Origin: Macrostomum lignano
Lineage: Eukaryota
Assembly: GCA_002269645.1 (NCBI GenBank)
Contig: NIVC01003400.1
Location: forward strand, 1-64,000
Length of the DNA: 64,000 bases
Reading direction: 5' to 3'
Positions within the stretch are counted from its first letter, which is position 1. Every line of letters begins with the position of its first letter. The notes beneath the pieces are model-generated. The model had not been told where the DNA came from. It ran no database searches and was given only the letters and a program-made list of their open reading frames with translations. A program made the translations under genes and the position numbers. This document shows positions 25,528 through 45,783 of the stretch, one piece after another.

Positions 25528-26231
25528 TATATTCTTAAATGTGTCCTCAGCCCATTTCTCATTCTGCATCTTATTATATCAGCTTGACTTTGATTTCAGC
25601 GCCGTATGGCTGCAGTGCTCTGCCGTCTCCAATCTATTCTATCCTCTTAATCCCCTTCAGGGGACAGACAGTCAGACAGAGCAGGGTTGGGATAATTTTG
25701 ATGACAGTCTGTCCTATGCTCGCAAAGAGAAAAGCTTTCATCCTCAGAGATCTCAATTCTGCCATCCGCAATCTACCGCCAATCAGTGGATTAGGTTTGG
25801 CGCGTGGGTCTCTTGACCAACTGGTGACCTGTTTTTTCTCCCCCAACCTGGTCTGTCTTCCCGGGCCGACTCCCGCGCCAATTTTCTGCAGGAGGGCTTT
25901 GAGAAACCAAGCAAGCCACTGACTACTGTGGATGAGCAGCTGGGCCGGGCCTGGGCGCAAATGGGTGACGCAATCGGTGGTTGTGGACGGGATGGCGTGG
26001 GTGGGTGGGGTTTCCCTTAATATCCTGGGGCTAGACGGGTGTCGGTCCTCCTTGAACCTGCGTGAGCCTCGGGGATAGCTTTCACTATCTTACTATCGAA
26101 TTCGACCACCCATGGGAGCTATTATGATACTGTCAGCCAGCTGGCATCTGTTGCCATCTGTCCGGCTGTCATAGACAACTGGGATCTACAAACTGGACTG
26201 GAGTCTAATTGATTTCCTTGTGTGGAATAGG

Positions 26232-27775: not shown

Positions 27776-28409
27776 GGCTTAGGAATGAAATTTCTTCGCA
27801 GTTCATTACTCTTTCCTTAATCATATCAAGTGTGAAATATACTCGCACGTCTAGTGGCTTTCATTCCAGGTGCCGATGATGGTTCAGTAGTCCATGGTTC
27901 AGCCAATTTTCACAGTCTACTGCGCCAGCTGGTCCACGGATCTCGGAAAAAACGCCAGAGTTGGATATTTGAACAGGCCTTAGGGTTGGGTTGGAGAAAA
28001 AACTACCCGAAGCCTACTGCGGATTCGAGCATAGCAACCCATTAGGACTTGCACTTGGGCAGGGGGAAGAAGGTTAGTCTATCAGTCGACTCGATAATAA
28101 AATCCAGGTGTTTTGAAATTTCAACAAAATAATAATTATTTATTCAGTTTTTTTATTCGTCTGACCAGCTGGTACTCGCGGTGCCAGAGTTGCGGTTGCT
28201 AAGCTGTTCCAGGCTCGAACCGATTTTATAGTGGCATGGTCCTCTCGCAATGCCATCATTAGTTGCAGCTGGGGCAGATGAGCATTTTTCATGTCCGGCG
28301 TTTTCTATAGGGCTCGCTGCAATCTGCTCTTGTGTGACTCATTTTGAAAGCCGATACACCTCTACTGTGGATTGATCCTTCCGTACGAACTGGTGGTAGG
28401 ATATTTGAT

Positions 28410-29532
28410 CTTAATTCTGTAGATCATTCTGTAGATTATTCGGTAGATTATTCTTTAGATTACAAGCTATTCTGTAGTTTATTCTGTAGATTATTCCGTA
28501 GATTATTCCGTAGATTATTCCGTAGATTATTCTGTAGATTATTCCGTAGATTATTCCGTAGATTATTCCGTAGATTATTCTGTGGATTATTCCGTAGATT
28601 ATTCCGTAGATTATTCCGTAGATTATTCTGTGGATTATTCCGTAGATTATTCCGTAGATTATTCCGTAGATTATTCCGTAGATTATTCTGTAGATTATTC
28701 CGTAGATTATTCCGTAGATTATTCTGTAGGTTATTCCGTAGATTATTCCGTAGATTATTCCGTAGATTATTCCGTAGATTATTCTGTGGATTATTCCGTA
28801 GATTATTCCGTAGATTATTCCGTAGATTATTCCGTAGATTATTCCGTAGATTATTCCGTAGATTATTCTGTAGATTATTCCGTAGATTATTCCGTAGATT
28901 ATTCCGTAGATTATTCTGTAGATTATTCCGTAGATTATTCCGTAGATTATTCTGTAGATTATTCCGTAGATTATTCCGTAGATTTTTCCGTAGATTATTC
29001 TGTAGGTTATTCCGTAGATTATTCCGTAGATTATTCTGTAGATTATTCTGTGGATTATTCCGTAGATTATTCCGTAGATTATTCCGTAGATTATTCCGTA
29101 GATTATTCCGTAGATTATTCCGTAGATTATTCTGTGGATTATTCCGTAGATTATTCTGTAGATTATTCCGTAGATTATTCCGTAGATTATTCCGTAGATT
29201 TTTCCGTAGATTATTCTGTAGGATATTCTGTAGGTTATTCTGTAGGTTATTCTGTAGGTTATTCTGTAGGTTATTCTGTAGGTTATTCTGTAGGTTATTC
29301 TGTAGGTTATTCTGTAGATCATTCCGTAGATTATTCCGTAGATTTTTCCGTAGATTATTCTGTAGGATATTCTGTAGGTTATTCTGTAGGTTATTCTGTA
29401 GGTTATTCTGTAGGTTATTCTGTAGGTTATTCTGTAGGTTATTCTGTAGGTTATTCTGTAGATCATTCCGTAGATCATTCTGTAGATTACTCCGTAGATT
29501 ATTCTGTAGATCATTCTGTAGATCATACTGTA
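28410..29532. repeat. 12-bp minisatellite (TAGATTATTCYG)n
   Basis: Direct reading; produces the YGII/RLFR/DYSV ORFs. Confidence 0.97.
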
Positions 29533-30430
29533 GAAAACAGACACTCCATCCCAGTCGGTTGTGTTGCCAACTGCATATAAAAATGATAGAAATGAAATGT
29601 CTTCATAATACCGAAGATTACTGGTTATTTTGAAGGCGCAATTCGGCATAGTTGAGTAATTTTGAGTAGTAAAATGAATTAGCATGCACTGGTGAACCCG
29701 CCATCGAATCAACATTGCGATGGGAAATTAAAATTCGACTACAAAGGAATTGTGCAAATTGCAATTGTTTTAAGGAGTCTGGCTTGAAGAAGCCAGTGGA
29801 TATTTAATTGCAAAGTCTGCATGCCTGCAGGGTGCCACTGTGTGGCCTATGTTAGCCAACCTACCGAACCGTGGAGCTCCCCAAGTGTGTTGGAGAGATT
29901 GAGAGGAAATTGGGTGGTGCTAAAGCAACACAATGAGGCCTTGATGACGCAATCCACAGGCAGGGCTAAACTAAACCCACCAAAAAGCAATATTTTAAAG
30001 GAAAAACTAAGGATCGTGATTGCTTCCCGTGTGACGCGACTGTGTAAATGCGAAGATTGCTCCCCAAGATGGTGCGTCCCGCGCAATCTGGGAGTGTCGT
30101 AGAGAAAAAAACCAACAACAAGCCGAGCCCTGGGAACGAGGCAGCAGGGCGAAGGAAGCGATTGGAACTCGCAGTCCCATTGTGCTCCCCTAAGCTGATT
30201 AACATCAACAAAACAATACAAAAAGGAGGCAGGGGAGGAAACCGATTGCTATAGCTAGTTGTTCCGATGAGGATCTTTGTTTTCGCTGGGGAGCCTCCCG
30301 ACCGAAATGCTGCCTCTAGCTCTCTGGTTTTCAACAAGTATTCTGTCTTTTTAGTGAAAACTTAATGGTGCGCCAGACCTGAGAGCCACTCTCCATATCT
30401 TCGCGTGATTCCTTGAAGGCCTTTCCATGA

Positions 30431-30716
<286 letters not shown>

Positions 30717-31554
30717 CAGACTAATCAATCAGAATTTCAATAGCAAAAAGCGACCTATTTATCATCTAAAGTGGTTATCAATCAGCCCATTGGAATCGTG
30801 TCAATTAGATAGCAACCAAAATCATTCGTCTCAAGTTTGGTGTCGAAATTATCATAGAAAAGGATAATGAAGCCCCTCCCCAAGGCCTAAAGCATCTACG
30901 AAGAGGCTGGGTCTTGATTCCCAGTCGCTGATCAAGTGTCACGAACAAGGCAGCTCATCAATCCGAGACTCAGTATGATTTCCCATATTCCCCTCCCTCA
31001 TCAGAGAGGCAGGAAAAGAGAATTTATTCAGCTCGTGCTCGCCCTCGGGGGCTGGGGAAGCGAGGGTTTTTTTAGCGAACTTGACTGCACCTGGGGATCG
31101 CGGCGGGTGGCGGCTGTGAGATGAGGCTGGCAGTTTTCTCCTTGGCAACCGTTTTTTGAGCAGAGACGCCACGCCAAAGCCCCCCCCCTCTGCGAGTTTC
31201 CCAGAACAGGCAGGGACAGACTAGCGGTGAAATGGCGAAGTGTGCCTTCTGAAAACTTCTTGAGAAGTTGCAAGCCTTCTTCCACGGCTTGCAATAGCTG
31301 AATGGCATTGGAAGCTCATTGGATTGGACAGGAGAGTTCTTATGAAAACAGTTTTAAAATACTGAAGAGCGCTGGAGGGAACTTGACAGACAGTTGCTTA
31401 AACTGGCTAGCACAGATGACGGAAACTCATGACGTGTTTGTTTAATTTTTGTTGTTGCTGGGTTTAGACTAAACACTTTAACTGGTTGTTATTTCTTTAA
31501 TATTTTCGCAATAAAAAAGCGAACTGAATTGATAGGGAATGTTCAATGCTTTCT

Positions 31555-32270
31555 TAAAGCTCCCTGAATCTGAGAAGGGGAGGCACAGAGAGGGAAGCAC
31601 AGATGGGGGAGGCACAGAGGGGAGGGAGGGGGAGGCACAGAGGGGGAGACACAGAGGGGAGGCACAGAGGGAGAGGCACAGAGGGGAGGCACAGAGGGGA
31701 GGCACAGAGGGAGAGGCACAGAGGGGAAGCACAGAGGGGAGGCACGGAGGGGAGGCACAGAGGGGAGGCACAGAGGGGAGGCACAGAGGGGAGGCACGGA
31801 GGGGAGGCACAGAGGGGAGGCACAGAGGGAGAGGCACAGAGGGGAAGCACAGAGGGGAGGCACAGAGGGGAGGCACAGAGGGAGAGGCACAGAGGGGAAG
31901 CACAGAGGGGAGGCACAGAGGGGAGGCACAGAGGGGAGGCACAGAGGGGAGGCACAGAGGGGAGGCACAGAGGGAGAGGCACAGAGGGGAGGCACAGAGG
32001 GGAGGCACAGAGGGAGAGGCACGAAGGGGAGGCACAGAGGGAGAGGCACGGAGGGGAGGCACAGAGGGGAGGCACGGAGGGGAGGCACAGAGGGGAGGCA
32101 CAGAGGGAGAGGCACGGAGGGGAGGCACAGAGGGGAGGCACAGAGGGAGAGGCACGGAGGGGAGGCACAGAGGGGAGGCACAGAGGTAGAGGCACGGAGG
32201 GGAGGCACAGAGGGGAGGCACAGAGGGAGAGGCACGGAGGGGAGGCACAGAGGGGAGGCACGGAGGGAGA
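31555..32270. repeat. 13/14-bp purine-rich minisatellite (GGCACAGAGGGGA)n
   Basis: Direct reading. Confidence 0.95.
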
Positions 32271-32672
32271 TGCTTGTAGAGGAAAACAGAAAAGGAGGAA
32301 AAAGGCACACAAAGGGAAATAAAAGGCAGTTATTTAGAGTTCAAAGCCATTTAGCTAAATTGATAACCAAAAATGTGTTGTTGTTCAGTAAAAGGCGACG
32401 TTTATTTTTGCTTCCAGAAGAGGCGGTTTTTTCTAGTCCAGAAAAAATTATCGGCATAAAAATCCAGTACAAATGAGAGGCGAGCACGAAAGTGTCTTTT
32501 TGGATTGCGAAAAATCGAGCTCCGCTTTGAGCGGCCCTTTGAGCAGGGGAAAAATTAAAAATAAACTGCTGAGCAAGTTTCGTACGGAATTTAAATTAAT
32601 AAAAAAACATAATACGACTGATTTGATTTCTGTTAGAGAAGAGGAGGCTGAGGGAGGAGGCAGCTGTCATCA

Positions 32673-32946
32673 TCAGGGCAGCCGCAGCCACACCTGCAGC
32701 TGCCGCCCGCCAAGACTCTGGCCATTCCAGTGGGCCACTGCGCTGGCCGCCGCCTGATATGACGCGAAACCCACCGCGGCAGAGGCGCCCGGCGGCTGAA
32801 GGTCGCCCTCGGCCGGTGCTGGCTGGCGGCCGGAGCTGGGCTCCAGGCGGACTTCGGCGAGGCCGCCAAACTGGCAGAACATTGACCAGAGCTGACGCTC
32901 GTCGGTGCCCGGTGGCAGGTTGCACACGCTGACGATGAAGGCTGGA

Positions 32947-32977
<31 letters not shown>

Positions 32978-33941
32978 CCAGAGCCGACTGAGGCGGCTGA
33001 GACTGCGGCTGTTGCGGAAGCTCCGAAGTCGGCACTGGAGGGTAGAACTGGGCCGGGGGGCAGCCTGGGAAGGCGGAGTAGAGGGTGGTCGGGTAGCCGT
33101 AGGTCGGGGGCAGGCCGTTCTGCTGCTGCATGGCGTAGAAGGTGGAAAAGTCGTAGGCCTGCGGCATCAGCGGAGGCGGCAGCGGTGGCGGCGGCAGCGG
33201 CATCTGAGGCGGCTGAGGCACCAGAGACAGCGGCAAGGAGGACAGATGTTGATGGACCTGATGATGCGGAAGCTGCGCCGGTAGAGATGACATCGATGTC
33301 GAAGGCGGCGGAGGTGGTGGCGGCAGCGGCAGTGACTGTGTCGAGGAGGCGGCAGCGCCTGACACCGCTGGCGGCCGGACTTTTTTCTCGTTCTCGTCGG
33401 CGAATCGAACCTGGACAAGCTGCTGCGGACTGTCGGCGGCTGCCTCGGCCGAGCCCGGCCACGGCTTCCCGTTTAGAGCGGCCAGCGCAGAGGCCGCCGC
33501 CGACCGGGTCTCGAACAGGCAGAATCCGACACCGCGGGCCCCGCCGCCGCCCCGATGGCCGCCAGGCAGAATCTTGCAGTTAATGATGCCACCGTGCGGT
33601 TCCAGAACGGCCCGAATGTCCTCAGCCGTGACAGTTGGCGGCAGGTTGGTGATGTGCAAATTGCAGTTCTTCGACTCCGAGCTCTGCAGTCTGGCGTGGG
33701 CAACTTTGATTGTCTTGCGGTGCAGCTGCAGGCCGTTCAGCATCCGCACGGCTCTGCTGGCATCCTCGGCCGTGTAAAACTCGCAGAAGCCGAAGCCGAA
33801 GCTGTAGCCGCTGCGCTTGTCCCGGCACACTTTGGCCCGTTTCACCGGCGCCACGCTGCCGAACAGGGCGCGAAACTCGTCATCTGAGAAGGCCTGAGGC
33901 AAGTAGTTGATGATGAGGTTGGTGCGCGAGTACTTAGCCAT
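32673..33941 (-). CDS. ELAV/Hu/Sex-lethal family RNA-binding protein (3 RRMs, Pro/Gln-rich hinge), intronless, 422 aa
   Basis: RRM1 TNLIINYLPQ...SGYSFGFGFCEF...LNG...KTIKVAHAR; RRM2 NLHITNLP...RGVGFCLF; RRM3 IVSVCNLPPGTDERQLWSMFCQFG...WNGQSLGGRQLQV. First ATG at 33941. Confidence 0.9.
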
Positions 33942-34399
33942 TTGATCAGCTGAACACTCTTGCACAAGTATGATTTACACCGCTCGGCCGCTTGCCTCTC
34001 CCTGTGTGTCTCCCCTGCCTTTCTAATCTTCTCTCCCCTTGAGTTGCGGCTGAGGGTTCGCTCCCCCGCTCATGTCTATGGCTGAAAGCTTGGTGGTAAA
34101 CGATAAGTACATAAGTAGCGATATATGGTGACTTTGATTCATTTATTGTTTTTTATTTGGGTAAAGAATTCTTTTGTTTACCAAGTCATACGCTATTTAG
34201 CTTACTAACAATAGTAGAACATGCTAGCTTGCTTCAAAGATTATTTCAACTTAGTTCCAAAATGGAAGCGATGTATGTATCAGAGCGGTTCTTTCGCTGC
34301 CGGGTCCCTATAATGGACCGGCAAATTAGTGAAACAGCATAGTCTCCACGAATCGGTGCTTTAATTCGGATAAGTCTTCTTGAAGCTTTCAGGAACACA

Positions 34400-34631
34400 C
34401 ATTACATGTATGCATACATGTAGTGGCCTAGAAAACAATTGTTGCATGTACTGCTTACATGGCAATCACAACCCGCAGTTTGGCTGTCGCCATTTTACAG
34501 CTGGGTGAACTGAAGCAATGCAGAAGTTAAGCGTCTTGCTCAAGGACACAAATTTTTCCGAGTGAGTCAAGAATCGAACCACCGACCTTTCAGTCGTCAG
34601 TCCGACGCTCTGACTACTGGGCTACAACCCC
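34400..34631 (-). mobile_element. tRNA-derived SINE with a CORE/Meta-like central domain
   Basis: Minus strand: A-box TAGCCCAGTAG, B-box GGTTCGATTC, then TGTGTCCTTGAGCAAGACGCTTAAC...CACCCAGCTGTAAAATGG (resembles the MIR/CORE consensus) and a TACATG-type tail. Confidence 0.75.
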
Positions 34632-35242
34632 CGTTGCCCAACCCTTAGTTGACATGCCCTTTACCAATATTGGCCAGTCATTTTTTGTGAACTTCATTAC
34701 AACAAAGAGAAATCAAACTTACATCAAAATTATAAAAATAGAAAACCATTCATTTATTTTTTCATTTACGATTTCCAATAGTGGCAACAGAGCAGTCTGC
34801 AGTCGGGTTTTATTACTGAATAAAACCGCAATGACAAGTAGTGCAATAAGAATGATGCCAGCAAAATGAAATGTTAAATTACGAATAGGAAAAAAGTACA
34901 AAAAAGCTGAAAATTGCGATTGGGTAACAGCAGCTATTCCTTCTAAGTTGCAATGCAATTCAAACATTCATAATGTATGCTTTTGTTGTAGTAGGACATG
35001 GCAGCTGGTCGCTCTCATGAGGAAGCTCACGTGAAGACTATAAATGAAACATCAATTCAATAGATCAAATCGAAAGACATGAAAAGCATTATTAAACTTC
35101 ATCATAAAAATTGAATAAAATAGAAAACGAACTTTGCGATCTGTTCCGATAAAGCAGTCAATAATTGCTCAATTTTCAACCGACTTTGGACTTTTTCGCT
35201 GCTAAATACGGAGAACGCTGTTGGAGGGAGCCTTCAGCCAGT

Positions 35243-38200
35243 TCAGATGTCGCCCTCGACTGAAGTAGAGTTATAAAACAGTCAAAACTGTGACATGTGC
35301 GCTATTTATCTAGGAAACAGGCTGAATAAACTTACACAGCAATCGGGGATTGCGAAAGCAGACTCTGCTGCCGGCCGTGGGACAGGAAACCTTCAGACAG
35401 AAGGGCCGGTAGGCCTCCGCCGCCCCTGATGCAGACTGGACGGCCGCGATCGGCAGGCTGAGCAGCTCGTACTTGGACAGCCCGGCCCGAGGACCGCTAG
35501 AATTAATATAAATGAGACTTTGCACTTGCTCTACAGACTACTATAAGTAAACAGGATTTTGTTAGAGATGGTTGGAAATTTTTAAGCAATAAAGATAAAC
35601 ACGAAAGAATTGGGGCGATAGAAAATTCGAGGTTAGGAAGGGAGGAGCGTCTGAAGACAGGAAGAGGGGGCAGAGGACAGGAAGAGGTGATAAAAGACAG
35701 GAAGAGAAGAGGGGACAGAGGACAGGAAGAGGTGATAAAAGACAGGAAGAGAAGAGGGGACAGAGGACAGGAAGAGGTGATAAAAGACAGGAAGAGGGGA
35801 CAGAGGACAGGAAGAGGTGATAAAAGACAGGAAGAGGGGACAGAGGACAGGAAGAGGTGATAAAAGACAGGAAGAGGGGACAGAGGACAGGAAGAGGTGA
35901 TAAAAGACAGGAAGAGGGGACAGAGGACAGGAAGAGGTGATAAAAGACAGGAAGAGGGGACAGAGGACAGGAAGAGGTGATAAAAGACAGGAAGAGGGGA
36001 CAGAGGACAGGAAGAGGTGATAAAAGACAGGAAGAGGGGACAGAGGACAGGAAGAGGTGATAAAAGACAGGAAGAGGGGACAGAGGACAGGAAGAGGTGA
36101 TAAAAGACAGGAAGAGGGGACAGAGGACAGGAAGAGGTGATAAAAGACAGGAAGAGGGGACAGAGGACAGGAAGAGGTGATAAAAGACAGGAAGAGGGGA
36201 CAGAGGACAGGAAGAGGTGATAAAAGACAGGAAGAGGGGACAGAGGACAGGAAGAGGTGATAAAAGACAGGAAGAGGGGACAGAGGACAGGAAGAGGTGA
36301 TAAAAGACAGGAAGAGGGGACAGAGGACAGGAAGAGGTGATAAAAGACAGCAATTAAGTAGAGAAAACTCAAAATCAACATTTTAGTTTCTTAGACTTTT
36401 GCCAATGCATTTCGACCACAATCGGTCATCTTCAGGGCAGACACGTCAATTAATCACGCAGAACCATGTTATAGATATTTATTTAGGAAATGAAAACTGT
36501 ACAATGCCAAGTGCAAATCAATTTCGGTCCAGTCCGGTTAACAAGAGAAAAAAAACCTGAATAAAGTTCGACGAGACTGCCAACCTAGCTAAAACACATT
36601 GAGCTGGCGGCTTGCACCCCCATGGTTAACTGGCTGTTCAAAATTGGTTTCTGAGCCTTAATGTACATAGCCTCGAGAATGTTAAATTTGTTTTCTTTGC
36701 TACAAGAATCGATCACTTTAAACATATCACAACAGCTCTTATTGCAGCAGGAGTTGCACGTGAGAAGGTGCTCATTGATGGCAGAATTTCTAATCCAATG
36801 TTCCTTAACCCTTGTGTACAAGTGTCGCTTGGTTTTACCAATGTAGGAGATGTTCTGATCCACAGAACAATGAAATTTATAGACGACACCTGCAACAAGT
36901 GGTCCAGGAACACGGGACTTCAACCTGCAGACAAACTGAGCAATCTTTTCCGTACGGAACAAAACCCGGAGCTGGAAATCAATGTGACTTCTAAATAAAT
37001 TTTCCACTTTCTTCCCAAACTCCATGGAGCAGAGGCCTAAATAAGGCACCACAATAACGGGACTACGATCATTACTGAGATCATTCTTCTTGAGTATGAT
37101 TTTGACCAGAAAACTTCTTGCAGAGAAACCTATTAATGATGCCGGAAATATGGCCACGAGGGTATCCATTCATCATGAACAGCCGAGTAAGCTGCTCCAG
37201 CTCATCATGAAAAAGCTTCCAGACAAAAGACAGGAAGAAGTGACAGAAGATAGGAAGAGGGGACAGAAGACAGGAAGGAGCGACAGAAGACGGAAGAGGT
37301 GACAGAAGACAGGAAGAGGTGACAGAAGACAGGAAGAGGCGACAGAAGACAGGAAGAGGTGACAGAAGACAGGAAGAGGGGACAGAAGACAGGAAGAGGG
37401 GACAGAAGACAGGAAGAGGTGACAGAAGACAGGAAGAGGTGACAAAAGACAGGAAGAGGTGACAGAAGACAGGAAGAGGTGACAAAAGACAGGAAAAGGT
37501 GACAGAAGACAGGAAGAGGTGACAGAAGACAGGAAGGAGCGACAAAAGACAGGAACTGAAGCGACAGAAGACAGTGATGGCAAACAAAGAAGGAATGGTT
37601 ATTGGGTCGGTTATCATAAAAGCACTCACTCTCCCAGGCACAGCTGGCACTGTCTCCATGTGAGCCACATCTGCCGATAATCTGTCTGGTTGAGCAGGCT
37701 GGGTGCATTGTTGTGCGCGACCACCTCAGGATCCAGAGTTGATCGCAGAATGCAGCGCGAGTTTCCGAAGGCACCAATAGTTGCCTCATAGTCAACCTAT
37801 TAGGGGTAATGGACAGCTCATTCATTAACAACTTGGAAAAGTAAACTTGCATTAGCATCTAAATTTAACAACTCTTAAAAAAATAAAATTATTCCCACTA
37901 AAAAATAAATACTTTTATACATATTTAGTGTTATATTTATATGTTGAATTAAGGCCCTACCATTTCCTGTGGTCCACAAAGAGAAATGACAGCATCTGAG
38001 AATCCTTTCACATCAAATAGCACACCAACACTATGCTTCACTTCGGTTGAGCGGCATAGATAGTCTGGCGATTTCGATGCAATCACCTCTGAAATAAAAA
38101 AATCAATTTAAACTGTCATGTATAGTTGCAACTGTAAATATAAAAGTAAAAAGTAAAATTACATCAAACAGTAAACTAAGAAGTCTTTGCCCCACTTCTA

Positions 38201-38373
38201 TTGATTTCTAATTAACAAACCTACCGATTTTTTAAATTTTGACTTTCTAAATTTGTATATTTTTACTGGCTAGCTAGGATGGGCTGTTTGCATTCTGGAA
38301 CTGATAATAGTTAGTAAAGAACATTGCACTTACCAATGTATTGAGAGACATTTCGAGAGGGTGAACAACCCAT
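35243..38373 (-). CDS. Spliced gene for a 170-aa FAMeT-like (Methyltransf_FA domain) protein; exons 38373-38334, 38088-37961, 37796-37630, 35496-35336, 35259-35243
   Basis: All four introns are GT-AG with compatible phases (1,0,2,1) and the total is 513 nt. Protein MGCSPSRNVSQYIEVIASK...VLFDVKGFSDAVISLCGPQEMVDYEATIGAFGNSRCILR...PSLLNQTDYRQMWLTWRQCQLCLGDG...FEGDI resembles the recalled domain pattern F.VK...DA.I.L...YE..IG..GN..S.IR...LL...YR.FW..W. Confidence 0.75.
35653..36349. repeat. 40-bp minisatellite (GACAGGAAGAGGGGACAGAGGACAGGAAGAGGTGATAAAA)n, a dimer of a 20-mer
   Basis: Direct reading. Confidence 0.97.
36352..37225 (-). mobile_element. 5'-truncated Penelope-like retroelement (RT C-terminal region plus GIY-YIG endonuclease), frameshifted
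   Basis: WKLFHDELEQLTRLFMMNGYP, then after a frameshift near 37100 VVPYLG...GVVYKFHC...YIGKTKRHLYTRVKEH...SAINEH...LEAMYIKAQKPILNSQ; hammerhead motif in the 3' UTR. Confidence 0.88.
36400..36439 (-). ncRNA. Minimal type I hammerhead ribozyme (Penelope-associated type)
   Basis: Minus strand UGCC-CUGAAGA-U-GACC-GAUUGU-GGUC-GAA-AUGCAU-U-GGCA: stem I UGCC/GGCA, stem II GACC/GGUC, palindromic stem III AUGCAU, NUH triplet AUU. Confidence 0.8.
37222..37580. repeat. 20-bp minisatellite (GACAGAAGACAGGAAGAGGT)n, related to the 40-mer at 35653
   Basis: Direct reading; shared GACAGGAAGAGG core. Confidence 0.95.
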
Positions 38374-40469
38374 TCTGGGGCTTTAATATAAGCAAATACT
38401 TAGCTTTCTTAGCTTAACTTCACAGTAAATTAAAAAAAATTTTTTACTATTACAAATATAAATTAGAACAAGTTACAGACAGACGTGAGACAGTCAGTCA
38501 ATGGACAACTAAGTTGTTCAGATCAACAACAGCTTGCTTGGTACTGTATTAATTTTCCGAAAGTTTGTAAAATATTTTATGAACAAGCTCTACTTTATGT
38601 CTGTTTCACTTGTGCCACGAATATTAGGGTTAAAGAAAAACAGAATAATTAACGACTAAATAGTACGAACAGGACTTCTAAATCACAACGGGAGCACAAA
38701 GGTAAAAAAGAACTTCGACCGTTACTAATATACACACAAAAAACTCACAACAACAGCTCTTATGCTGTCAAAACAGTTCTGCAGGCATTTATCATTAAAA
38801 CTTTACTTCAAAAAGATCAAAGATTTTTTTTATCTTAGCAAGATTTGATTTACTACGCTAACATATTCAAAGTTTGATAAGCATGTTGTTTTCTACGAAA
38901 CAGTATAGATTAATGAGTGACGTGACGTCGGTGACGACCATGCAATCTTACTCTTAATCTTTGTCTTATGTAAGGCAGTAAGGGTTATGTCCAGGGGCAG
39001 TACGTCTATGTATCAGTTTTAGTCCTTATACTCCTAAAAATCTATTTTAATCATTGACTTTGAAGCATAAGTTAAATTTGGATAAAATTGAAATGAACTT
39101 AGCTTTTTAGTCTATTTTAGACTAAACTTAGTCTATTTTAGTGAGTTTTAAATTTGGTAATAGTCAATTTTGATAACAAAATTTGGCAATAACTAGTTTC
39201 GCAGTAGAATAAGTTAATATAAATATATTATAATAACAATCCTTAATTATTTTAATCTTATTTCTTTTATTACATTGGCTATAGTCAAGTCCCAGGGTCA
39301 GGATTGTATACTGCTGTATGCCAGAACAAAAACTGCTTCCATAGCTCATGTATGCCAATGGTATGCCAACAAACTTTTTATTGCATACAGAAATATGCCA
39401 AAATAAAAATACAAATTATGACCAATATTAATTAATAGCTTGCAAAATTTTAATATTTAAAAAATTAATATGTTTAAACTAGTATTTTTTTACTAAACTG
39501 TATAGAAGTAGTTTATTTTTACTATTTTTGTTTTACTTTTAACTTCTTAGAAAAGTTAAATTGGGTTTTTAAATTTAGTTTGAATCTATTTTTTCATTAA
39601 GGGCTAGCTATTCCTTCTAATCAAAATTTAGCTATTGTAAATGTAACTATATGTACATGGAGACTACACCAAATGTAAACTTAAACATTTTGTATACTAA
39701 TTGTATAGATTGATGGGGACTCAGAACTTTTAGTCCCACTTACTGTCTTGACAATTTCTATATGCCAAGCTGTAGGCCTATGCCAAAAGGGCACACCAGG
39801 TCCCTCTATATATCAAGTTGTATGCAAATGGTGTACTATAAGTCCCTCTGTATGCTGGAATTTTCCGGCGTACATGTATACCATCCAGAGTCTGGCTATA
39901 GTCATAGATAGTAAAAGGCAATTATAAGTTAAAAGAATATTTGGCACTTGAATATAATAAAATTGTAGCATCAATATACAAATCAATGATAAACAAATAT
40001 TATAATATATTGTAAATTGAAATCTGCAAATGTTGCTGATTAGCATTTGTCTATTATATAACTAACTATACTTGTTAATACCATATACAAAAAGAAAGAT
40101 CTTTAAATATCTCTCCCCTCTATGGCTACTTGTGTCCAGTGCAAGGTGTATTTTGTTATTGTTATTTTATAATATATCAAAAAACATTGTTGATTGACTT
40201 TATACAAAGTATAGGTACAACATAAATTTCATAGATCCCATGCGTGTGACATACATTTACATCTGTTGCCTGGTTATAGTATTTTTAGTGCATTTAACTG
40301 CATTAAGATAGCCCTAAGTTTGTATATAGCATTTGGAAAAAATATTTAGATGGGTGGGAAGATGTCAGAGTGTCAGATGGGAGGACATATTGTCATCAAG
40401 TAATCTAAATTGTTAGCTTATCACAATCCTATCAGTTGTGAAACCAGTTGCAGAAAGACAGATGCTTGC

Positions 40470-40598
40470 TGATAAGGGCCAAAATCATATAAAAATTCTG
40501 TATGGCACAAGCCACTTCTGCAAAATTGATTGAACACCTGATCTGCATTCATTGCAACCTCTGGGTGGGTGTGCAACAGAGCCAGGATGATAAGCAGC
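40470..40598 (-). mobile_element. Probable hAT-type transposase C-terminal (dimerization region) remnant
   Basis: LALLHTHPEVAMNADQVFNQFCRSGLCHTEFL resembles the recalled ZMYM1-like hAT ending LALLHIH...D.D.VI..FA....RRLEF. Confidence 0.45.
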
Positions 40599-41075
40599 AA
40601 GGGTGCCAGCCAGAGCAGCAGGGGTGCCAGCCAGAGCAGCAGGGGTGCCAGCCAGGGCAGCAGGGGTGCCAGCCAGGGCAGCAGGGGTGCCAGCCAGAGC
40701 AGCAAGGGTGCCAGCCAGAGCAGCAGGGGTGCCAGCCAGAGCAGCAGGGGTGCCAGCCAGAGCAGCAGGGGTGCCAGCCAGGGCAGCAGGGGTGCCAGCC
40801 AGAGCAGCAAGGGTGCCAGCCAGAGCAGCAGGGGTGCCAGCCAGAGCAGCAGGGGTGCCAGCCAGAGCAGCAGGGGTGCCAGCCAGAGCAGCAGGGGTGC
40901 CAGCCAGAGCAGCAAGGGTGCCAGCCAGAGCAGCAAGGGTGCCAGCCAGAGCAGCAGGGGTGCCATTCAGAGCAGCAGGGTGCCAGCCAGAGCAGCAGGG
41001 ATGCCAGTCAGAGCAGCAAGGGTGCCAGCCAGAGCAGCAGGGGTGCCAGTTAGGACAGCAGCTCTGGCTGGCACC
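40596..41075. repeat. 21-bp minisatellite (GGGTGCCAGCCAGAGCAGCAG)n
   Basis: Direct reading; 7-aa periodic ORFs in all frames. Confidence 0.97.
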
Positions 41076-41084
41076 CTGAAAAAT

Positions 41085-41200
41085 TTCAAAAAGAAAAATT
41101 TCTGATCGAACAGTGCAAGTTCGAAGAAAATCGGTCCAGCCGTTCGGGAGAAAATCGATTGCGCACAAGCAAACATACAAATAACTCATTTTTAGTGTAT
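41085..41200 (+). mobile_element. Possible non-autonomous Helitron-related (Lep1/HINE-like) fragment
   Basis: GAAAATCGGTCCAGCCGTTC...CAAACATACAAA motif; a similar arrangement occurs at 51380-51570. Confidence 0.3.
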
Positions 41201-41939
41201 GGAAATGAAAAAAACTTGAAAAACTAATGCACATGTTTCGGTGTACAGAAGAAATGACTTGCAGTTTTGGGTCACTCCATGAGAAGGTATGCTCTACCAT
41301 ATCCCAGCCATAAAGTTTTTCGACAATTTCAGATAACTTCGACCGAGAGAATAGTAAAATTTATTTTGTGTGAAAGTTTTAGAAAATGTGTTTAACTCGA
41401 CACGAGGATTTTTCACAGTAAATTTCAATTTAAATGACCAATTTAACACATTCGTTCCCGTTCATTCGACGTGTCTATCTTTAGAATTTGAATGGAAGCA
41501 ATGAGCAACTGACGTGGTGATTGATCAATGATCAGCACAATGTTTTGCCTGATTTGCTAGTTGCTTGATTGCAGAGTTTCACTGTTAGGCCTTTGCTGTC
41601 AGGATTGGCACGCTGTATCAACTTCCGTTTTGTTAGTTAACGCGCCTCGGTATTATTATCCTTCTCCCGCAACTGGTCCCTAGGTTTGGCCTGGAACACC
41701 ACCCACGCACAAATGATGACTTTGAATTGCGCGTGATTTTAAATCGGTTTCTTTAATCCGCTTCACAATTGTGTCTTAGTTGGTTGCTGAAACAAAATCT
41801 AAATTTTTCTTATCCTCTCCGGACTTCATCCAATCAAGTGTTGTGTGGCGCATTCGTGTGTCTTCCGAGCACGAGCTCAGTCCGACAAAGTTATGATTTC
41901 GCAGCTATCCGGCCTATCCAATCAGCTTGCCGTTGAATT

Positions 41940-42118
41940 CTCTATAAAAATGGCAGCACGGTAGTCGCCGACACAGACGCCAGTCTGAAACTGTTGAGAA
42001 TTGTCCTATTATCTAACGTGTCTTCTGGTAAGTGACTCTGTCTGCTGGCTGTTCAACGTATTCTAATAAGTGTTTTCAACTAGCTCCAAGTTTACAAACT
42101 TGCTACTGACCATTTCAG
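41940..42118 (+). promoter_or_regulatory. TATA promoter, non-coding first exon and 5'-UTR intron of the secreted-peptide gene
   Basis: TATAAAA at 41943-41949; donor CTG|GTAAGT at 42028; branch-like CTGAC at 42106; acceptor TTTCAG at 42118. Confidence 0.6.
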
Positions 42119-42159
42119 ATTCTTCAATATCGAAAGCGCTCACAAAAAGAAGCCAAATC

Positions 42160-42555
42160 ATGCTGAAGATTCGCGCCGCTTTTGTTGTCCTCCTGCTGAC
42201 TGCCTGCGTGCTGGCCGGGTTAGTTTTAGTTTGATTTTGTTTATCTAGCATGTATTTTGTGTTGCAGACACCTGACTATGCAGTGCAATAAGTTGCATTT
42301 CTCAATTGCAGCAATTCCGTGTCCGGCAGCGAGGTCTCTAACAATCGGATCTGCCGTCTGGTTGAGGCCATGGCTCGGGTGAGTCTCGGTGCCAGTCGGT
42401 TACAAAAGATCCCATATTCGCGCATGAAACATGCAGATTTTCTTGAACTTTTCTTAAACTTGCAGGTTGCGGACTGCGACTCCGTGCCAGCTGGCATCGA
42501 CAATGTTTACCTGGGCAAGGCGCTGGAGAAACGCCGCGATCGATTCCGCGGCTGA
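42160..42555 (+). CDS. Small secreted peptide/neuropeptide-like precursor, 71 aa; exons 42160-42218, 42312-42378, 42466-42555
   Basis: MLKIRAAFVVLLLTACVLAGNSVSGSEVSNNRICRLVEAMARVADCDSVPAGIDNVYLGKALEKRRDRFRG*: hydrophobic signal peptide, Cys pair, KR site, terminal Gly. GT-AG introns of phase 2 and 0. Confidence 0.72.
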
Positions 42556-44611
42556 TGGAACGTCAACAGCTGATTTGACCACAAGACTTGTTTTGTTTCT
42601 TCAACATTCTGCCCAGGAACTGAACTGTTCTAAGAATCCCTTCTATCTCCCGACTAAGTCTGTGTATTTCGTTTTTTGAACTATCTATAACATCACACTT
42701 GAGTTTCTGGAGACTCGCTAGTGATTAGGAGAATGTTTTTTTGAACGATATCAACTTCGACGATAAAAGCACAGCTTGTGATAAACTGAAACTACAAATA
42801 TAATACACAATTATCGACTGGCTGAGTGAGTCTGTTGCTGACAGTTCTTCAACTGCCCGGTCGAAAGAGAGAGAGAGAGTTGTTAAATTGCAAACCATAT
42901 AATATCTTCCTGTTTGGTCTTGGTTTTTTTACTATGATTGTAAAATCCTTGGTTAGGATCTTGGTCTGATTGGACACTTGTCTTCTAGCTTGTTTGGCGT
43001 ATTCGATGCTTGTGGTCAAGCTCATTGAGCAATCTACAGTATAATAATTATTTTGACAATCTTAAAGCAATTATTTGTCTCCTGTCAAAAGCGCTCTCGC
43101 CTACACAAATAATCTACGAAGTAAGTTTAGTGTCTTTCAATCGCTATCGATGTGTAATCTTCTTAAGCAACACTTTCTTCAGTGCCTTTTAGCCAGTAGC
43201 ATTTCAAATCTTCGTCAGTTAAAACAAAAAATATGCTTGAGGTGTGTGAAAGAGGCTAATTTTAATGTTAACAGGAGCTTGCGATGGCACAGGCATTGAA
43301 CAACAGGGATTGACGTTAACTATTTCTGCTGAGAACTGCGTCTTGTTGGCGTTCTTGGCCGCATTCAATCCAGCGAAGGTTATCGCTTCAATTCTATCTA
43401 GGAGCGGCTGTAATCCCACAACTAAGCCCTGTGCCTTATCATGCAGCTGCGGCGGCAGCTGAACCCAAGCCTTGATCTCACTTCTATTGACTCAAAGCTT
43501 ATCTGCGTAAGCTAAGGAATTAATCGACTTATCATTCGAAAATTACTTTTTTCGAGTGAGAAAAAATGAGTTATTGCCTAGTTCAGTTGCATTTTTTACT
43601 AGACTCATTTCCATTTTTTTGCTGCACCAGTTCTTGTACAAGGATAGTGTTGCAACACCGCTACAGGATCTACAAGTTAGTACTTGAATGTGCCATGTAT
43701 CGTTGCGTCTGCACACGGCTCTTCTATGGATCCTGCACTGCGCTTATGGTTGTCATGCTTTACGACCTAGCAAAGATATAAGACAACCGTTTTTACGATT
43801 GTAAACTTAAAAAGAAATGAGTTTCTCTTCAAGTTAATGCAGGTCTATTGGTGTAAGGCACTGAAATGGAACGTCATCCTATCTTCAGTTTTTTAATTCA
43901 AAATTCGTGCGGCTATTTATGGAAGTTTTTCAACCTACCAGACCAGACCTTAAGCTGACGAAGCTTTTGCTTCGGAAATTGCCTTCTTAATTCATTTGCT
44001 TTTTTGCCGAACTGCTAAAACATGAGAATTTTTGGTCAAAGAAACTTGAGCCTTCGGGGAATCGCAACTAATTTCCGTGCTAATTAGCACTGTCGAGTAG
44101 GATCGGAGCTGTGTTGGAGCGAGTCTTAAAACCGCTTTGAGTTATTGTTGGCGCAGTATGGGGCGAGCAGAAATCCGTTTGATTCCGAGGTGGCTCCTTA
44201 ATTTCCTTCTTTTTTTACTGAGGCAAGTACTGGAATTTTAATCCTGGATTTCCACTGGTCCCTTGGGCATCGGCCTTATTATCCTCACATGATGAGATAT
44301 GCATCGAGACGCGTTGGATTTATGCCAATTTCCTCCATCTTTTGCGAAGCAGATTAACCTCAGATTAGATCGATTTGGTCCGAGTCTGAATCCTTAGACC
44401 ATCTACATTCGATTTTGTGCTAGAAAAGTGAATTTATTCTATTTTTGTTGTTTTCCCTGAAAAAACTCAACTTTTATATGCTTTACAATGATGTAGAATA
44501 AATGCTTATCACAATAGTGACCCTTCTAATTGGCAAAACTTCAAAACTCCACCAAATACAGATCAAATCACTGCAAGCAATTTCAGCCACCTGACCTATT
44601 CGCTCAGTAAA

Positions 44612-45783
44612 ATGTCGCTTGAAGCAATTCGCTACGCCAATGGCGAGCTGTCAATTATTGATCAATTGCTTTTGCCGCATCAGACAGTGTACATTCGTAT
44701 CGCCAGCTGTGAGGAAGCCTGGTCAGCTATTAAAAGGATGCAGGTGCGTAATTTTGTTACATTGCGTCTTGACATTGAGAGCATACAGCTGCATCTAATC
44801 TCTGGATTTCTCAGGTTCGTGGCGCCCCAGCCATTGGCATTGTTGGCAGCTTAGCCATGGCTGTAGAGCTGAAATCGCCGGACACCCTGTCTCAGGTGGA
44901 CAGTTCGGCAAAATTGTCCGCCTGGTTAGGCGCCAAATGGGACCGACTGGTGTCGGCCCGTCCAACTGCCGTCAATCTGCAGGACAGCCGCGAACGGATG
45001 TTTCGCCTTCTATCCACCGACTGGTCAGCAATGGACGTAGCCGGTCAGCGTCTGGCCGCTGTGGAATGGCTGGAGTCGCAGCTGGAACAAGATGTCCGCT
45101 CCTGCCGAGCCATTGGAGAGGCTGGCGCCAATGCCCTACTACAAAGTGTCGAAGAGCGCGGCCTCGTACCGCCTGGTGGCCAAGTGAACGTGCTGACTCA
45201 CTGCAACACGGGCTCTTTAGCCACCGGAGGCTACGGCACCGCACTAGGCGTTGTGCGCAGCCTGCACAATCGAGGGCGCTTAGGCCGGATATTCTGCACA
45301 GAGACTCGACCCTACAACCAGGGCGCCAGGCTCACAGCCTACGAAATCGTTGCTGACGGGCTGCCGGGCACTCTAATCTGCGACAGCATGGTTGCCGCGG
45401 CCATGGCAAGCGGCCGAGTGCACGCTGTTGTCCTGGGTGCCGATCGGATCGTGTCCAACGGCGACACCGCGAACAAGATTGGCACCTATCAGATTGCCGT
45501 ACTGGCTCGTCATCATTCCATACCGTTCTTCGTGGCGGCGCCTCTTACTAGCATTGATTTTAGCATGCGCACCGGTTCCGAGATCGTCATCGAGGAGCGG
45601 CCGTCCGACGAGTTGGCCTGCGTTGCCGGCCAACGAATTGCTTGTCGCGGCATTGACATCTGGAATCCGGCGTTCGACGTTACTCCGGCCGAGCTAATCA
45701 CGGCCATAGTGACGGACACGGGCGTGGTGCCCCCAAATAATGTTGCAGCTCTGGCTAAGAAGCTGGGGGCCGAACAGGGCTGA
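44612..45783 (+). CDS. mri1: Methylthioribose-1-phosphate isomerase; exons 44612-44743 and 44815-45783 (366 aa)
   Basis: [10 protein letters not shown]...MQ|VRGAPAIG...RPTAVNL...[19 protein letters not shown]...[12 protein letters not shown]...[16 protein letters not shown]...NPAFDVTP; phase-0 intron. Confidence 0.96.

What the first reader, a model, noticed from the sequence alone, without database searches (positions are those of the whole stretch)
36352..37225. Penelope-like element with a complete minimal hammerhead core lying sense inside a host intron
Seen: the PLE fragment and its hammerhead (36400-36439) are on the same strand as the FAMeT-like gene, within its 2.1-kb intron 3. All core nucleotides are present (CUGAAGA, extra U, GAAA, AUU), and stem III is the palindrome AUGCAU. 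Known: PLE hammerheads with a palindromic stem III cleave efficiently as dimers and poorly as monomers. Inference: a lone copy may be tolerated because it needs a partner. Host pre-mRNA cleavage could then be triggered in trans by transcripts of other PLE copies, which would couple TE activity to host gene output.
Basis: partly seen in the sequence, partly recalled or inferred. Interest (0 to 1): 0.7.

Follow-up and report, generated by a model that had tools for sequence, protein, structure and literature searches.

The report
Retrotransposon hammerhead ribozyme inside flatworm intron
A broken copy of a Penelope-like retrotransposon, still carrying that family's intact miniature hammerhead ribozyme motif, sits in the sense direction in an intron of a small flatworm (Macrostomum lignano) gene; it is an ordinary example of a known kind, and nothing shows that it cuts the host RNA.

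Summary
Everything lies on the window's minus strand. An 873-bp, 5'-truncated, frameshifted Penelope-like element (PLE; 37223-36351) carries a complete minimal type-I hammerhead (36439-36400), 146 nt after its GIY-YIG ORF. It is sense-oriented in the 2133-nt intron 3 of a 170-aa Methyltransf_FA-domain gene.

The window is Macrostomum lignano contig NIVC01003400.1. The spliced gene model reproduces annotated proteins Mlig010601g2/g3 exactly.

The motif is not chance:
- Shuffles give 0.01 such motifs per window.
- A covariance model built only from hammerheads of five related PLEs hits it at 40 bits, E about 1e-6.
- Relatives show compensatory changes in 7 of 8 stem pairs.

The paralogue g1 has an uninterrupted minisatellite at the same spot, so this is a lineage-specific insertion. 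A second, 99.5%-identical locus shares it.

The proposed trans-triggered cleavage of host pre-mRNA is unsupported:
- There is no second hammerhead in the gene.
- The predicted intermolecular Kd is about 0.06-0.6 mM.
- Published PLE mini-hammerheads show no monomer cleavage and only low dimer cleavage.
- Intron cleavage by slow hammerheads does not block splicing.

Verdict: a new member of a known kind, of low interest.

The parts
36351..37223 (-). 5'-truncated, frameshifted Penelope-like element fragment (about 873 bp). It has no counterpart in the paralogous locus L001.
   Evidence: blastn of the window against L001 leaves 37221-36354 unmatched, while both flanks align. tblastn of PLE relatives P0001 and P0002 hits only here.
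37117..37223 (-). Remnant of the RT C-terminal / HTH_animal linker of the PLE polyprotein (…FMMNGYPRGHISGIINRF…). It is in a different frame from the endonuclease ORF, so there is a frameshift.
   Evidence: The ORF list shows the frame change. P0001 residues 50-82 align at 37215-37117. P0001 carries PF26215 HTH_animal.
36585..37169 (-). 194-aa ORF with the GIY-YIG endonuclease domain of the PLE (VVYKFHC…SYIGKTKRHLYTRVKEH…LEAMYI…LNSQ).
   Evidence: Pfam PF01541, E=2.6e-6, 28.1 bits against a cut-off of 22.6. 73 homologues were found. The closest, P0005, is 70% identical and has RVT_1 and GIY-YIG hits and carries PF26215 HTH_animal (precomputed).
36400..36439 (-). Minimal type-I hammerhead ribozyme motif of the PLE 3' tail. 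The predicted scissile bond lies between 36404 (U17) and 36403 (G1.1).
   Evidence: Sequence and fold. Descriptor scan and shuffles. Model R1, 40.2 bits, E=8e-7. Covariation among relatives.
36373..36381 (-). Short block AUGUUGAUU in the PLE tail, downstream of the hammerhead. It is conserved in the related element L002. It may belong to the PLE 'tail' used for priming (inference).
   Evidence: Alignment A1.
37222..37574 (.). 20-nt minisatellite on the gene-upstream side of the insertion (90% matches).
   Evidence: Tandem Repeats Finder. It aligns to the continuous array L001 10767-11650.
35654..36350 (.). The same minisatellite on the gene-downstream side of the insertion, here homogenised into a 40-nt higher-order unit (98% matches).
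   Evidence: Tandem Repeats Finder. The variant CTTTTATC occurs 17 times here and 0 times in L001.
35497..37629 (-). Intron 3 of the host gene, 2133 nt, GTGAGT…TTCTAG. It is made of the minisatellite plus the PLE.
   Evidence: The paralogue's intron 3 is about 1.08 kb.
35243..38373 (-). Host gene CDS, Mlig010601 g2/g3 type, 170 aa, with a Methyltransf_FA domain. Exons: 38373-38334, 38088-37961, 37796-37630, 35496-35336 and 35259-35243.
   Evidence: tblastn with P0003. The spliced translation is intact. Pfam PF12248, 27 bits against a cut-off of 24.2. Exact identity to PAA48719.1/PAA51564.1.

Best explanation
This is a dead-on-arrival copy of a Penelope-like retrotransposon. It inserted into a 20-nt minisatellite inside intron 3 of the Macrostomum lignano gene Mlig010601, in the lineage leading to copies g2/g3. 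It is 5'-truncated and carries a later or inherited frameshift.

The copy retains the element's 3' tail. That tail carries the family's conserved minimal hammerhead, which is a piece of the transposon's own RNA-processing equipment. In intact or tandem elements two such motifs pair through the palindromic helix III (and swap stem I) to form a double hammerhead, possibly helped by the element's protein.

As a lone copy inside a spliced intron it is transcribed with the host pre-mRNA but is expected to be catalytically almost silent. Its 1-bp helix III is unstable and the minimum-energy fold masks core bases. It most likely has no effect on host gene output.

Shown: identity, orientation, intactness of the motif, family-wide conservation of the structure, the empty paralogous site, and an intact host CDS. 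Inferred: inactivity as a monomer and neutrality for the host.
For: - Identity and orientation.
- Host model and source. The window is 100% identical to M. lignano NIVC01003400.1.
- Empty site: paralogue g1 (L001) has a continuous minisatellite and no PLE.
- Shared insertion: L013, 99.5% identical, has the same PLE and an identical hammerhead.
- Position in relatives: related PLE loci carry the same kind of motif about 90-270 nt after the ORF stop. In the full-length element L011 it lies on both flanks, 2662 nt apart.
- Common features in the seven descriptor-scan copies (five loci): 4-5-bp stem I, one extra nucleotide after A9, G10.1, 5-6-bp stem II, a 6-8-nt palindrome and H17 = C or U.
- Model built without the window: 40.2 bits, E=8e-7.
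- Covariation: 97.4% of cells paired against 67.8% in shuffles, 7 of 8 pairs with double changes, and slid controls at or below 40%.
- Monomer energetics: the active fold is -2.7 kcal/mol, stems I+II alone -8.0, and the minimum-energy fold -9.9.
- No second hammerhead in the window or in L001.
- Literature: these exact features define PLE min-HHRs, most occur as single motifs in truncated PLEs, and a single motif showed no detectable cleavage (PMC4209133). The Anolis PLE hammerhead cleaves only with the PLE protein, and no RNA-seq ends were seen at its site (PMC11167929). Introns cut by a slow hammerhead still splice (PMC2995048).
Against: - No cleavage assay or RNA-end data exist for this sequence, so inactivity is inferred from thermodynamic models and from other species' elements.
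- The motif is perfectly intact while the coding part is broken. This is equally expected for a young insertion, but it does not exclude retained activity.
- Lunse et al. 2017, which may report better dimer activity, could not be read.
- Copy number and expression of this PLE family in M. lignano were not measurable with these tools.
- Alignment A4 was fitted to the model structure, which inflates the pairing counts somewhat.
Confidence: 0.8

Rival explanations
1. The lone intronic hammerhead is a conditional cleavage site. Transcripts of other PLE copies pair with it in trans through AUGCAU and the swapped stem I, cut the host pre-mRNA, and so couple transposon activity to host gene output.
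For: The motif is intact and sense-oriented. Cofold predicts that the domain-swapped double hammerhead is the preferred dimer geometry. A relative from another dataset (L002) keeps identical helix III and stem I 3' arms, so family members could in principle be compatible.
Against: - The predicted Kd is about 0.06-0.6 mM, so less than 2% would be dimer even at 1 uM RNA.
- Reported dimer activity of PLE min-HHRs is low (PMC4209133, PMC6765202).
- No other copy of this PLE lies in the 64-kb window or in L001.
- Cutting the host site in trans needs only the partner's core, so the intact core in the intron is irrelevant to this model.
- A slow hammerhead cut in an intron does not prevent splicing (PMC2995048).
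Confidence: 0.04
2. Protein-assisted cleavage. When an active PLE of this family is expressed, its RT/EN protein binds the tail in the intron. It chaperones the monomer (or bridges two RNAs) into an active fold and cuts the pre-mRNA.
For: The Anolis Poseidon hammerhead cleaved only when the PLE protein was added, independently of the GIY-YIG active site (PMC11167929). The fragment keeps the 3' tail downstream of the hammerhead, including a block conserved with L002.
Against: In that same study no RNA-seq reads began or ended at the hammerhead site in vivo. PLE proteins act mostly in cis on their own RNA (general knowledge of retrotransposons, not tested here). No intact PLE of this family was seen in the sequence available. 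The arguments from splicing tolerance also apply.
Confidence: 0.05
3. The insertion does matter to the host, but not through ribozyme activity. A sense-strand AAUAAA (36483-36478), cryptic splice sites, or the expanded minisatellite could cause premature termination or altered splicing of g2/g3.
For: There is an AATAAA in sense orientation inside the PLE tail. The intron is doubled in size and one flank of the minisatellite is re-homogenised. In frogs, related ribozyme-bearing repeats are depleted from introns (bioRxiv 10.64898/2026.07.22.740005).
Against: The annotation of both PLE-bearing loci gives the normal full-length 170-aa product. All splice sites are canonical and the CDS is intact. 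No transcript data were examined.
Confidence: 0.1
4. The hammerhead-like string is a chance match with no relation to ribozymes.
For: No Rfam family hits it. The fold z-score of the 51-mer is unremarkable at -0.93.
Against: 0.01 motifs are expected per window, and 0 of 300 shuffles have the palindrome. The independent covariance model gives E=8e-7. The motif sits at the same position relative to the PLE ORF as in at least five related elements, with covarying stems.
Confidence: 0.01

Closest known systems
Minimal hammerhead ribozymes (min-HHRs) of metazoan Penelope-like elements (Cervera & De la Pena 2014, PMC4209133), for example those of the Schistosoma mansoni Cercyon PLEs
   Same: Type-I topology, 4-bp helix I, an unpaired nucleotide between A9 and G10.1, a G10.1-C11.1 pair, a palindromic 15.x-16.x/loop 3, and a location in the PLE terminal repeat or tail. 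It occurs as a single motif in a truncated PLE, and the host is a flatworm.
   Different: Helix II is 4-5 bp rather than the 7-8 bp typical of the Schistosoma families. H17 is U. The host species (Macrostomum lignano) returned no paper linking it to PLE hammerheads in the searches I ran. Activity is untested.
Double-hammerhead (dimer) self-cleavage of newt satellite and ASBV RNAs (Forster et al. 1988, cited in PMC4209133 and PMC6765202)
   Same: An unstable helix III with a palindromic loop, so that two copies must pair to form an extended helix III.
   Different: Those RNAs are transcribed as tandem multimers, which supply the partner in cis. Here there is a single copy in an intron with no partner within the gene.
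Conserved intronic hammerheads of amniotes (HH9 in RECK, HH10 in CTCL, and DTNB; De la Pena & Garcia-Robles 2010, summarised in PMC6155905)
   Same: A type-I hammerhead lying sense in an intron of a protein-coding gene, and thought to derive from retroelement hammerheads.
   Different: Those are full hammerheads with loop-loop tertiary contacts, active as monomers, and conserved at orthologous positions over hundreds of millions of years. This one is a minimal motif, is absent even from the paralogue g1, and matches no Rfam hammerhead (including HH9/HH10) model.
CPEB3 intronic HDV-like ribozyme (PMC10919898)
   Same: A precedent that a self-cleaving ribozyme in an intron can tune host mRNA output by competing with splicing.
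   Different: It belongs to a different ribozyme class, is an efficient monomer, and is deeply conserved. It is not TE-borne in its present form.

Membership tests
Hammerhead ribozyme (type I) | Conserved catalytic core: C3 U4 G5 A6 N7 G8 A9, G12 A13 A14, the A15.1-U16.1 pair, and H17 (not G) before the cut | tested here: met
   CUGAAGA … GAA A … U U|G read directly from the minus strand of 36400-36439.
Hammerhead ribozyme (type I) | Three-way junction with helices I and II supported by compensatory changes in relatives | tested here: met
   7 of 8 pairs have changes on both sides. 97.4% of cells are paired against 67.8% in shuffles (0 of 500 reach the observed value). Slid controls are at or below 40%. 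Caveat: the alignment was fitted to the model.
Hammerhead ribozyme (type I) | Match to the curated Rfam hammerhead models (Hammerhead_1, _3, _II, HH9, HH10) | tested here: not met
   No hit at gathering thresholds or at E<=10 on 301 nt. This is probably because min-HHRs lack the helix III and loop contacts that typical hammerheads have (PMC6155905; Rfam's models themselves were not inspected).
Hammerhead ribozyme (type I) | Site-specific self-cleavage giving 2',3'-cyclic phosphate and 5'-OH ends | not testable with these tools
   This needs in vitro transcription assays or end-specific RNA sequencing.
PLE min-HHR (Cervera & De la Pena 2014) | [quoted passage not shown] | tested here: met
   U12, G13-C26, AUGCAU and UGCC/GGCA respectively. 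The same features occur in L005, L007, L009, L010 and L011. Criteria are quoted from PMC4209133.
PLE min-HHR (Cervera & De la Pena 2014) | Location in the terminal repeat or tail of a PLE, in the same orientation as the ORF | tested here: met
   The motif lies 146 nt downstream of the stop of the GIY-YIG ORF, on the same strand. Relatives have it about 90-270 nt downstream, and on both flanks in L011.
Penelope-like element | C-terminal GIY-YIG endonuclease domain | tested here: met
   PF01541, 28.1 bits against a cut-off of 22.6.
Penelope-like element | Telomerase-related reverse transcriptase domain upstream of the endonuclease | tested here: not met
   It is absent from this copy because of the 5' truncation at about 37223. 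Only about 35 codons of the RT-C/HTH linker remain, and they are out of frame. The closest relative, P0005 (70% identity), has RVT_1 at 27.1 bits, just under the cut-off of 29.6, and carries PF26215 HTH_animal (precomputed). L011 has RVT_1. The fragment is therefore a remnant of a PLE, not a complete one.
Penelope-like element | Mobile insertion: present or absent between homologous sites, with a target-site duplication | tested here: inconclusive
   Presence/absence is clear: the element is absent in L001 and present in the window (=L012) and L013. The duplication is ambiguous. CTGTCTTTTGTC on one side and CTGTCTTTTATC on the other cannot be told apart from the periodicity of the minisatellite.
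Domesticated intronic hammerhead (amniote HH9/HH10 type) | Conservation at the orthologous or paralogous intron position, and stable monomeric helix III with tertiary contacts | tested here: not met
   The motif is absent from paralogue g1. Helix III is 1 bp, and the active monomer fold is about 5 kcal/mol worse than stems I+II alone.
Farnesoic acid O-methyltransferase (host gene label 'FAMeT-like') | Methyltransf_FA domain (PF12248) | tested here: met
   27.0 bits against a cut-off of 24.2, covering profile positions 15-95 of 140. This is only one partial domain in a 170-aa protein that NCBI annotates as hypothetical. 'FAMeT-like' names a domain, not a demonstrated enzyme.

The most novel reading that the evidence does not exclude
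The intact sense-strand mini-hammerhead makes intron 3 of Mlig010601 g2/g3 a conditional cut site. The site would become active only when RNA and/or protein of the same PLE family is abundant, for example in the germline or during transposon bursts. Output of the PLE-bearing copies would then fall relative to the PLE-free paralogue g1. The three paralogues would be a ready-made natural experiment for transposon-coupled gene dosage control.
Probability: 0.04. Interest if true: 0.6.

Novelty: new member of a known kind. Interest (0 to 1): 0.2.

Why it matters
As it stands, this is one more truncated Penelope-like element with its signature mini-hammerhead. Such elements occur by the thousand in flatworm and other animal genomes.

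Its modest value:
1. It documents the motif in Macrostomum lignano, a regeneration and ageing model with transgenesis (the model status is from my own knowledge).
2. The locus comes in PLE-bearing (g2/g3) and PLE-free (g1) paralogues. That would allow a clean test of whether a lone sense intronic min-HHR ever cuts in vivo, which is an open question for PLE hammerheads generally.
3. It shows that Rfam's hammerhead models miss this class, while a small custom covariance model finds it cleanly.

If in vivo cleavage were found, it would bear on how intronic ribozymes became domesticated in amniotes.

Tried and rejected
- Rfam scans of the whole window at gathering thresholds and of 36300-36600 at E<=10 gave no hammerhead, only two chance bacterial sRNA matches.
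I used stop-to-stop ORFs and X-joined pseudo-proteins instead. Only one host exon was detectable that way.
- I briefly considered that the host exon 3 had a frameshift, which would make it a pseudogene, because a second frame resembled the end of the Methyltransf_FA domain. I rejected this once the M. lignano protein showed the real splice to exon 4 and an intact CDS.
- The first homologue search with the PLE ORF gave only 2 hits. A 3-sequence profile gave 73.
- The L002 relative has a degenerate hammerhead with broken stems I and II, so it is not useful for covariation. L004 has too little 3' flank.
- A second hammerhead-like descriptor hit at 27697-27784(+) lies at the end of a 25-nt satellite. 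It lacks the palindrome and is not found by model R1, so I judged it chance.
- A target-site duplication could not be established inside the tandem repeat.
- Lunse et al. 2017 (PMC5785218) is not held in the library.
- My first hand-written dimer structure strings were malformed and were corrected.
- No genome-wide census of this PLE family in M. lignano was possible. The contig look-ups were exhausted and the DNA collections on hand are microbial or viral.
Full report
WHAT IS THERE

Read on the minus strand, window 36439-36400 is UGCC CUGAAGA U GACC GAUUGU GGUC GAAA UGCA U U GGCA. Mapped onto standard hammerhead numbering:
- Helix I: the 5' strand UGCC (2.4-2.1) pairs with GGCA (1.1-1.4).
- Core: C3 U4 G5 A6 A7 G8 A9, then one unpaired U.
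- Helix II: G10.1-C11.1 and three or four further pairs, with loop GAUUGU or AUUG.
- G12 A13 A14.
- Helix III: a single A15.1-U16.1 pair closing UGCA, so that A-UGCA-U is the 6-nt palindrome AUGCAU.
- H17 = U.

The predicted scissile bond lies between window positions 36404 and 36403. The finding did not say that all of it is on the minus strand.

THE ELEMENT AROUND IT

The minus-strand ORF 37169-36585 (194 aa) carries a GIY-YIG endonuclease domain (PF01541, 28.1 bits, cut-off 22.6). Upstream of it, in another frame, about 35 codons align to the end of the HTH_animal/RT-C region of related proteins. The copy is therefore both 5'-truncated and frameshifted.

A profile search returned 73 relatives. 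The closest is P0005 (70% identity), with RVT_1 and GIY-YIG hits and PF26215 HTH_animal (precomputed). Locus L011 is a full-length element with an RVT_1 ORF followed by an HTH_animal/GIY-YIG ORF. This is the Penelope-like element (PLE) architecture.

The fragment runs from about 37223 to about 36351. The hammerhead lies 146 nt after the stop codon and about 50 nt before the element's 3' end.

IS THE HAMMERHEAD MORE THAN CHANCE?

- A descriptor scan (core, 0-1 extra nucleotide, helix II of at least 4 bp, GAAA, 4-6-nt loop, U-H, helix I of at least 4 bp) finds exactly one such motif in both strands of the window. 300 dinucleotide-preserving shuffles give a mean of 0.01 per window, and none has a palindromic helix III.
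- I fetched the DNA around nine further relatives of the PLE protein (plus 25, 26). In L005, L007, L009, L010 (two elements) and L011 (both flanks, 2662 nt apart) the same architecture sits about 90-270 nt downstream of the ORF stop.
- Those motifs share a 4-5-bp helix I, one extra nucleotide after A9, G10.1, a 5-6-bp helix II, a 6-8-nt palindrome and H17 = C or U.
- L007 and L011 carry the U3-A8 core covariation described for Schistosoma PLEs.
- Covariance model R1, built from five of these and excluding the window, finds window 36439-36400 at 40.2 bits, E=8e-7. It is the only significant hit in 128 kb searched; the next best has E=0.43.
- On the model-based alignment of ten distinct sequences, 97.4% of cells pair against 67.8% in shuffles (0 of 500 reach the observed value). 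7 of 8 pairs show changes on both sides, and sliding the partner drops pairing to 40% or less. The alignment is fitted to the model, which favours the structure somewhat.
- Rfam 15 finds nothing, either at gathering thresholds or at E<=10 locally. Its hammerhead models do not detect this minimal class.

These features are the ones Cervera & De la Pena (2014, PMC4209133) give as diagnostic of PLE 'min-HHRs': a nucleotide between 9 and 10.1, a conserved G10.1-C11.1 pair, palindromic 15.2-16.2/loop 3, and a 4-5-bp helix I. That paper also notes that most genomic copies are single motifs in truncated PLEs.

THE HOST GENE AND THE SOURCE

The exon at 37796-37630 (minus strand) hits Pfam Methyltransf_FA. 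Its best database relative is Macrostomum lignano BOX15_Mlig010601g1 (P0003).

tblastn and inspection of the splice sites give five exons:
- exon 1: 38373-38334
- exon 2: 38088-37961
- exon 3: 37796-37630
- exon 4: 35496-35336
- exon 5: 35259-35243

All introns are GT-AG. Intron 3 spans 37629-35497 and is 2133 nt long.

The spliced product (170 aa; PF12248, 27.0 bits, cut-off 24.2) is identical, residue for residue, to PAA48719.1/PAA51564.1, annotated as Mlig010601g2 and g3. The window is 100% identical over 15,131 nt to M. lignano contig NIVC01003400.1 (L012). 'FAMeT-like' means only one partial Methyltransf_FA domain in a protein annotated as hypothetical.

AN EMPTY SITE

The paralogous locus g1 (L001, NIVC01001481.1) is collinear with the window. 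It shares the same RRM gene downstream and the same eIF-2B-family gene upstream, with flanks 91-98% identical.

Its intron 3 is about 1.08 kb and consists of one uninterrupted 20-nt minisatellite. Window 37221-36354 has no counterpart there.

A third locus (L013, NIVC01004073.1) is 99.5% identical to the window. It has the same PLE and an identical hammerhead.

The PLE therefore inserted into the minisatellite after g1 diverged from the g2/g3 lineage and before g2 and g3 separated (these may be alleles or recent duplicates).

A target-site duplication (CTGTCTTTTGTC / CTGTCTTTTATC) is possible but cannot be separated from the repeat periodicity.

HOW IT MOST LIKELY WORKS

In PLEs the hammerhead belongs to the element's own life cycle. 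It probably processes transcripts of tandem or full-length copies, where two motifs are present on the same RNA (PMC4209133, PMC6765202).

For this sequence the hammerhead-competent monomer fold, with its 1-bp helix III, scores -2.7 kcal/mol. Stems I+II alone score -8.0. The minimum-energy fold scores -9.9 and pairs core bases with loop 3.

Cofolding two copies gives a domain-swapped double hammerhead. Helix III (AUGCAU/AUGCAU) and both helices I are intermolecular. This is topologically required, because strand 16.1-H17-1.1 must come from the partner.

The ensemble binding free energy is only -4.6 to -4.8 kcal/mol at 37 C (Kd about 0.4-0.6 mM) and -5.5 to -5.7 at 20 C (Kd about 60-85 uM). Less than 2% of strands would be dimeric even at 1 uM. 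These are nearest-neighbour estimates that ignore tertiary contacts, Mg2+ effects and proteins.

Published experiments agree:
- A single S. mansoni min-HHR showed no detectable cleavage, and dimers and trimers showed 'some, though low' activity, mostly at non-physiological Mg2+ (PMC4209133).
- A review calls the rates 'very low, even as dimers' (PMC6765202).
- The Anolis Poseidon hammerhead cleaved only when the PLE protein was present, and no RNA-seq ends were found at its site in vivo (PMC11167929).

There is no second hammerhead or PLE copy in the window or in L001, so the host pre-mRNA has no partner in cis.

Even real cleavage of an intron by a slow hammerhead leaves splicing intact in vivo, whereas a fast ribozyme blocks it (Dye et al. 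2006 and Fong et al. 2009, as summarised in PMC2995048).

My best explanation is therefore a lineage-specific (postdating the g1 split), dead PLE fragment whose intact min-HHR is transcribed within the intron but is functionally silent and neutral to the host.

The trans-trigger idea is physically conceivable but is not supported by anything measurable here.

It also has an internal weakness. In a domain-swapped dimer the host site is cut by the partner's core. Any RNA carrying AUGCAUU|GGCA would be an equally good target, so the 'complete core' in the intron is irrelevant to host cleavage.

A variant that I cannot exclude is protein-assisted activation. I give the two together roughly 0.1.

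COMPARISON AND NOVELTY

The closest known entity is the metazoan PLE min-HHR, to which this belongs on every sequence and structure criterion tested. Cleavage itself is untested.

It is not a member of the domesticated amniote intronic hammerheads. It lacks positional conservation, since it is absent from g1. It has no stable monomeric helix III, and it matches no Rfam hammerhead model.

The concept that an intronic ribozyme may tune host mRNA is already established for other cases (PMC6155905, PMC10919898).

This is a new member of a known kind. Interest is low. The only attractive angle is the natural three-paralogue contrast in a tractable flatworm.

Noticed in passing
window 29243-44373 region (matches L012 1-15131): The window is 100% identical to Macrostomum lignano contig NIVC01003400.1 (GCA_002269645.1). 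The assembly holds three copies of this locus: g1 without the PLE and g2/g3 with it. This fits the known partial genome duplication of the species (the duplication is from my own knowledge).
   Followed up: yes
window 35654-36350 versus 37222-37574: The minisatellite split by the PLE evolved differently on its two sides. The gene-downstream side is a 98%-homogeneous 40-nt higher-order repeat carrying the variant CTTTTATC 17 times. That variant is absent from the other side and from paralogue g1. The upstream side keeps the 20-nt unit at 90%. This suggests array expansion after the insertion, starting from the unit next to the PLE.
   Followed up: partly
window 27697-27784 (+), and L001 21435-21526 (-): A hammerhead-like string (CUGAUGA … GAAA) sits at the end of a 25-nt satellite (26228-27770). 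Helix I is only 3 bp, there is no palindromic helix III, and covariance model R1 does not find it. It is most likely chance.
   Followed up: partly
whole window: The density of micro- and minisatellites is extraordinary: about 25-30 separate arrays with score of at least 150 in 64 kb, with periods of 4 to over 100 nt. They include (GATA)n, (TATC)n and many 12-43-nt units.
   Followed up: no
P0024: A PLE-type protein with RVT_1 and HTH_animal domains is deposited as a protein of a 'Candidatus Omnitrophica bacterium' MAG. This is probably a eukaryotic retrotransposon contig binned into a bacterial genome. Many other relatives come from ENA, TARA or JGI 'metagenome' assemblies.
   Followed up: no
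L011 175-216 and 2837-2878; L007 2654-2695: L011 is a full-length PLE from a metagenome assembly flanked by two identical min-HHRs 2662 nt apart, the first ending right at the ORF start. This element and L007 use the rare U3-A8 core covariation (UUGAAAA) instead of C3-G8.
   Followed up: partly
window 36483-36478 (-): An AAUAAA hexamer lies in sense orientation inside the PLE tail, about 40 nt upstream of the hammerhead. It is a potential premature polyadenylation signal within host intron 3.
   Followed up: no
window 36381-36373 (-) ; L002 about 2170-2180: Apart from the hammerhead, the only well-conserved block in the 3' tails of the window PLE and the 53%-identical L002 element is AUGUUGAUU, about 20 nt downstream of the cut site. 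It may be part of the PLE 'tail' or reverse-transcription initiation signal described in PMC11167929.
   Followed up: no
window 38373-38356 (-): The host protein begins MGCSPS, an N-terminus of the type that is N-myristoylated and palmitoylated. This would make the small Methyltransf_FA-domain protein membrane-anchored rather than a soluble enzyme.
   Followed up: no
window 32673-33965 (-) and about 44586-45775 (+): The neighbouring genes are a two-RRM RNA-binding protein (430-aa single-exon ORF) downstream of the host gene and an eIF-2B-family gene (PF01008 in L001) upstream. Both are syntenic in all three M. lignano loci examined.
   Followed up: partly
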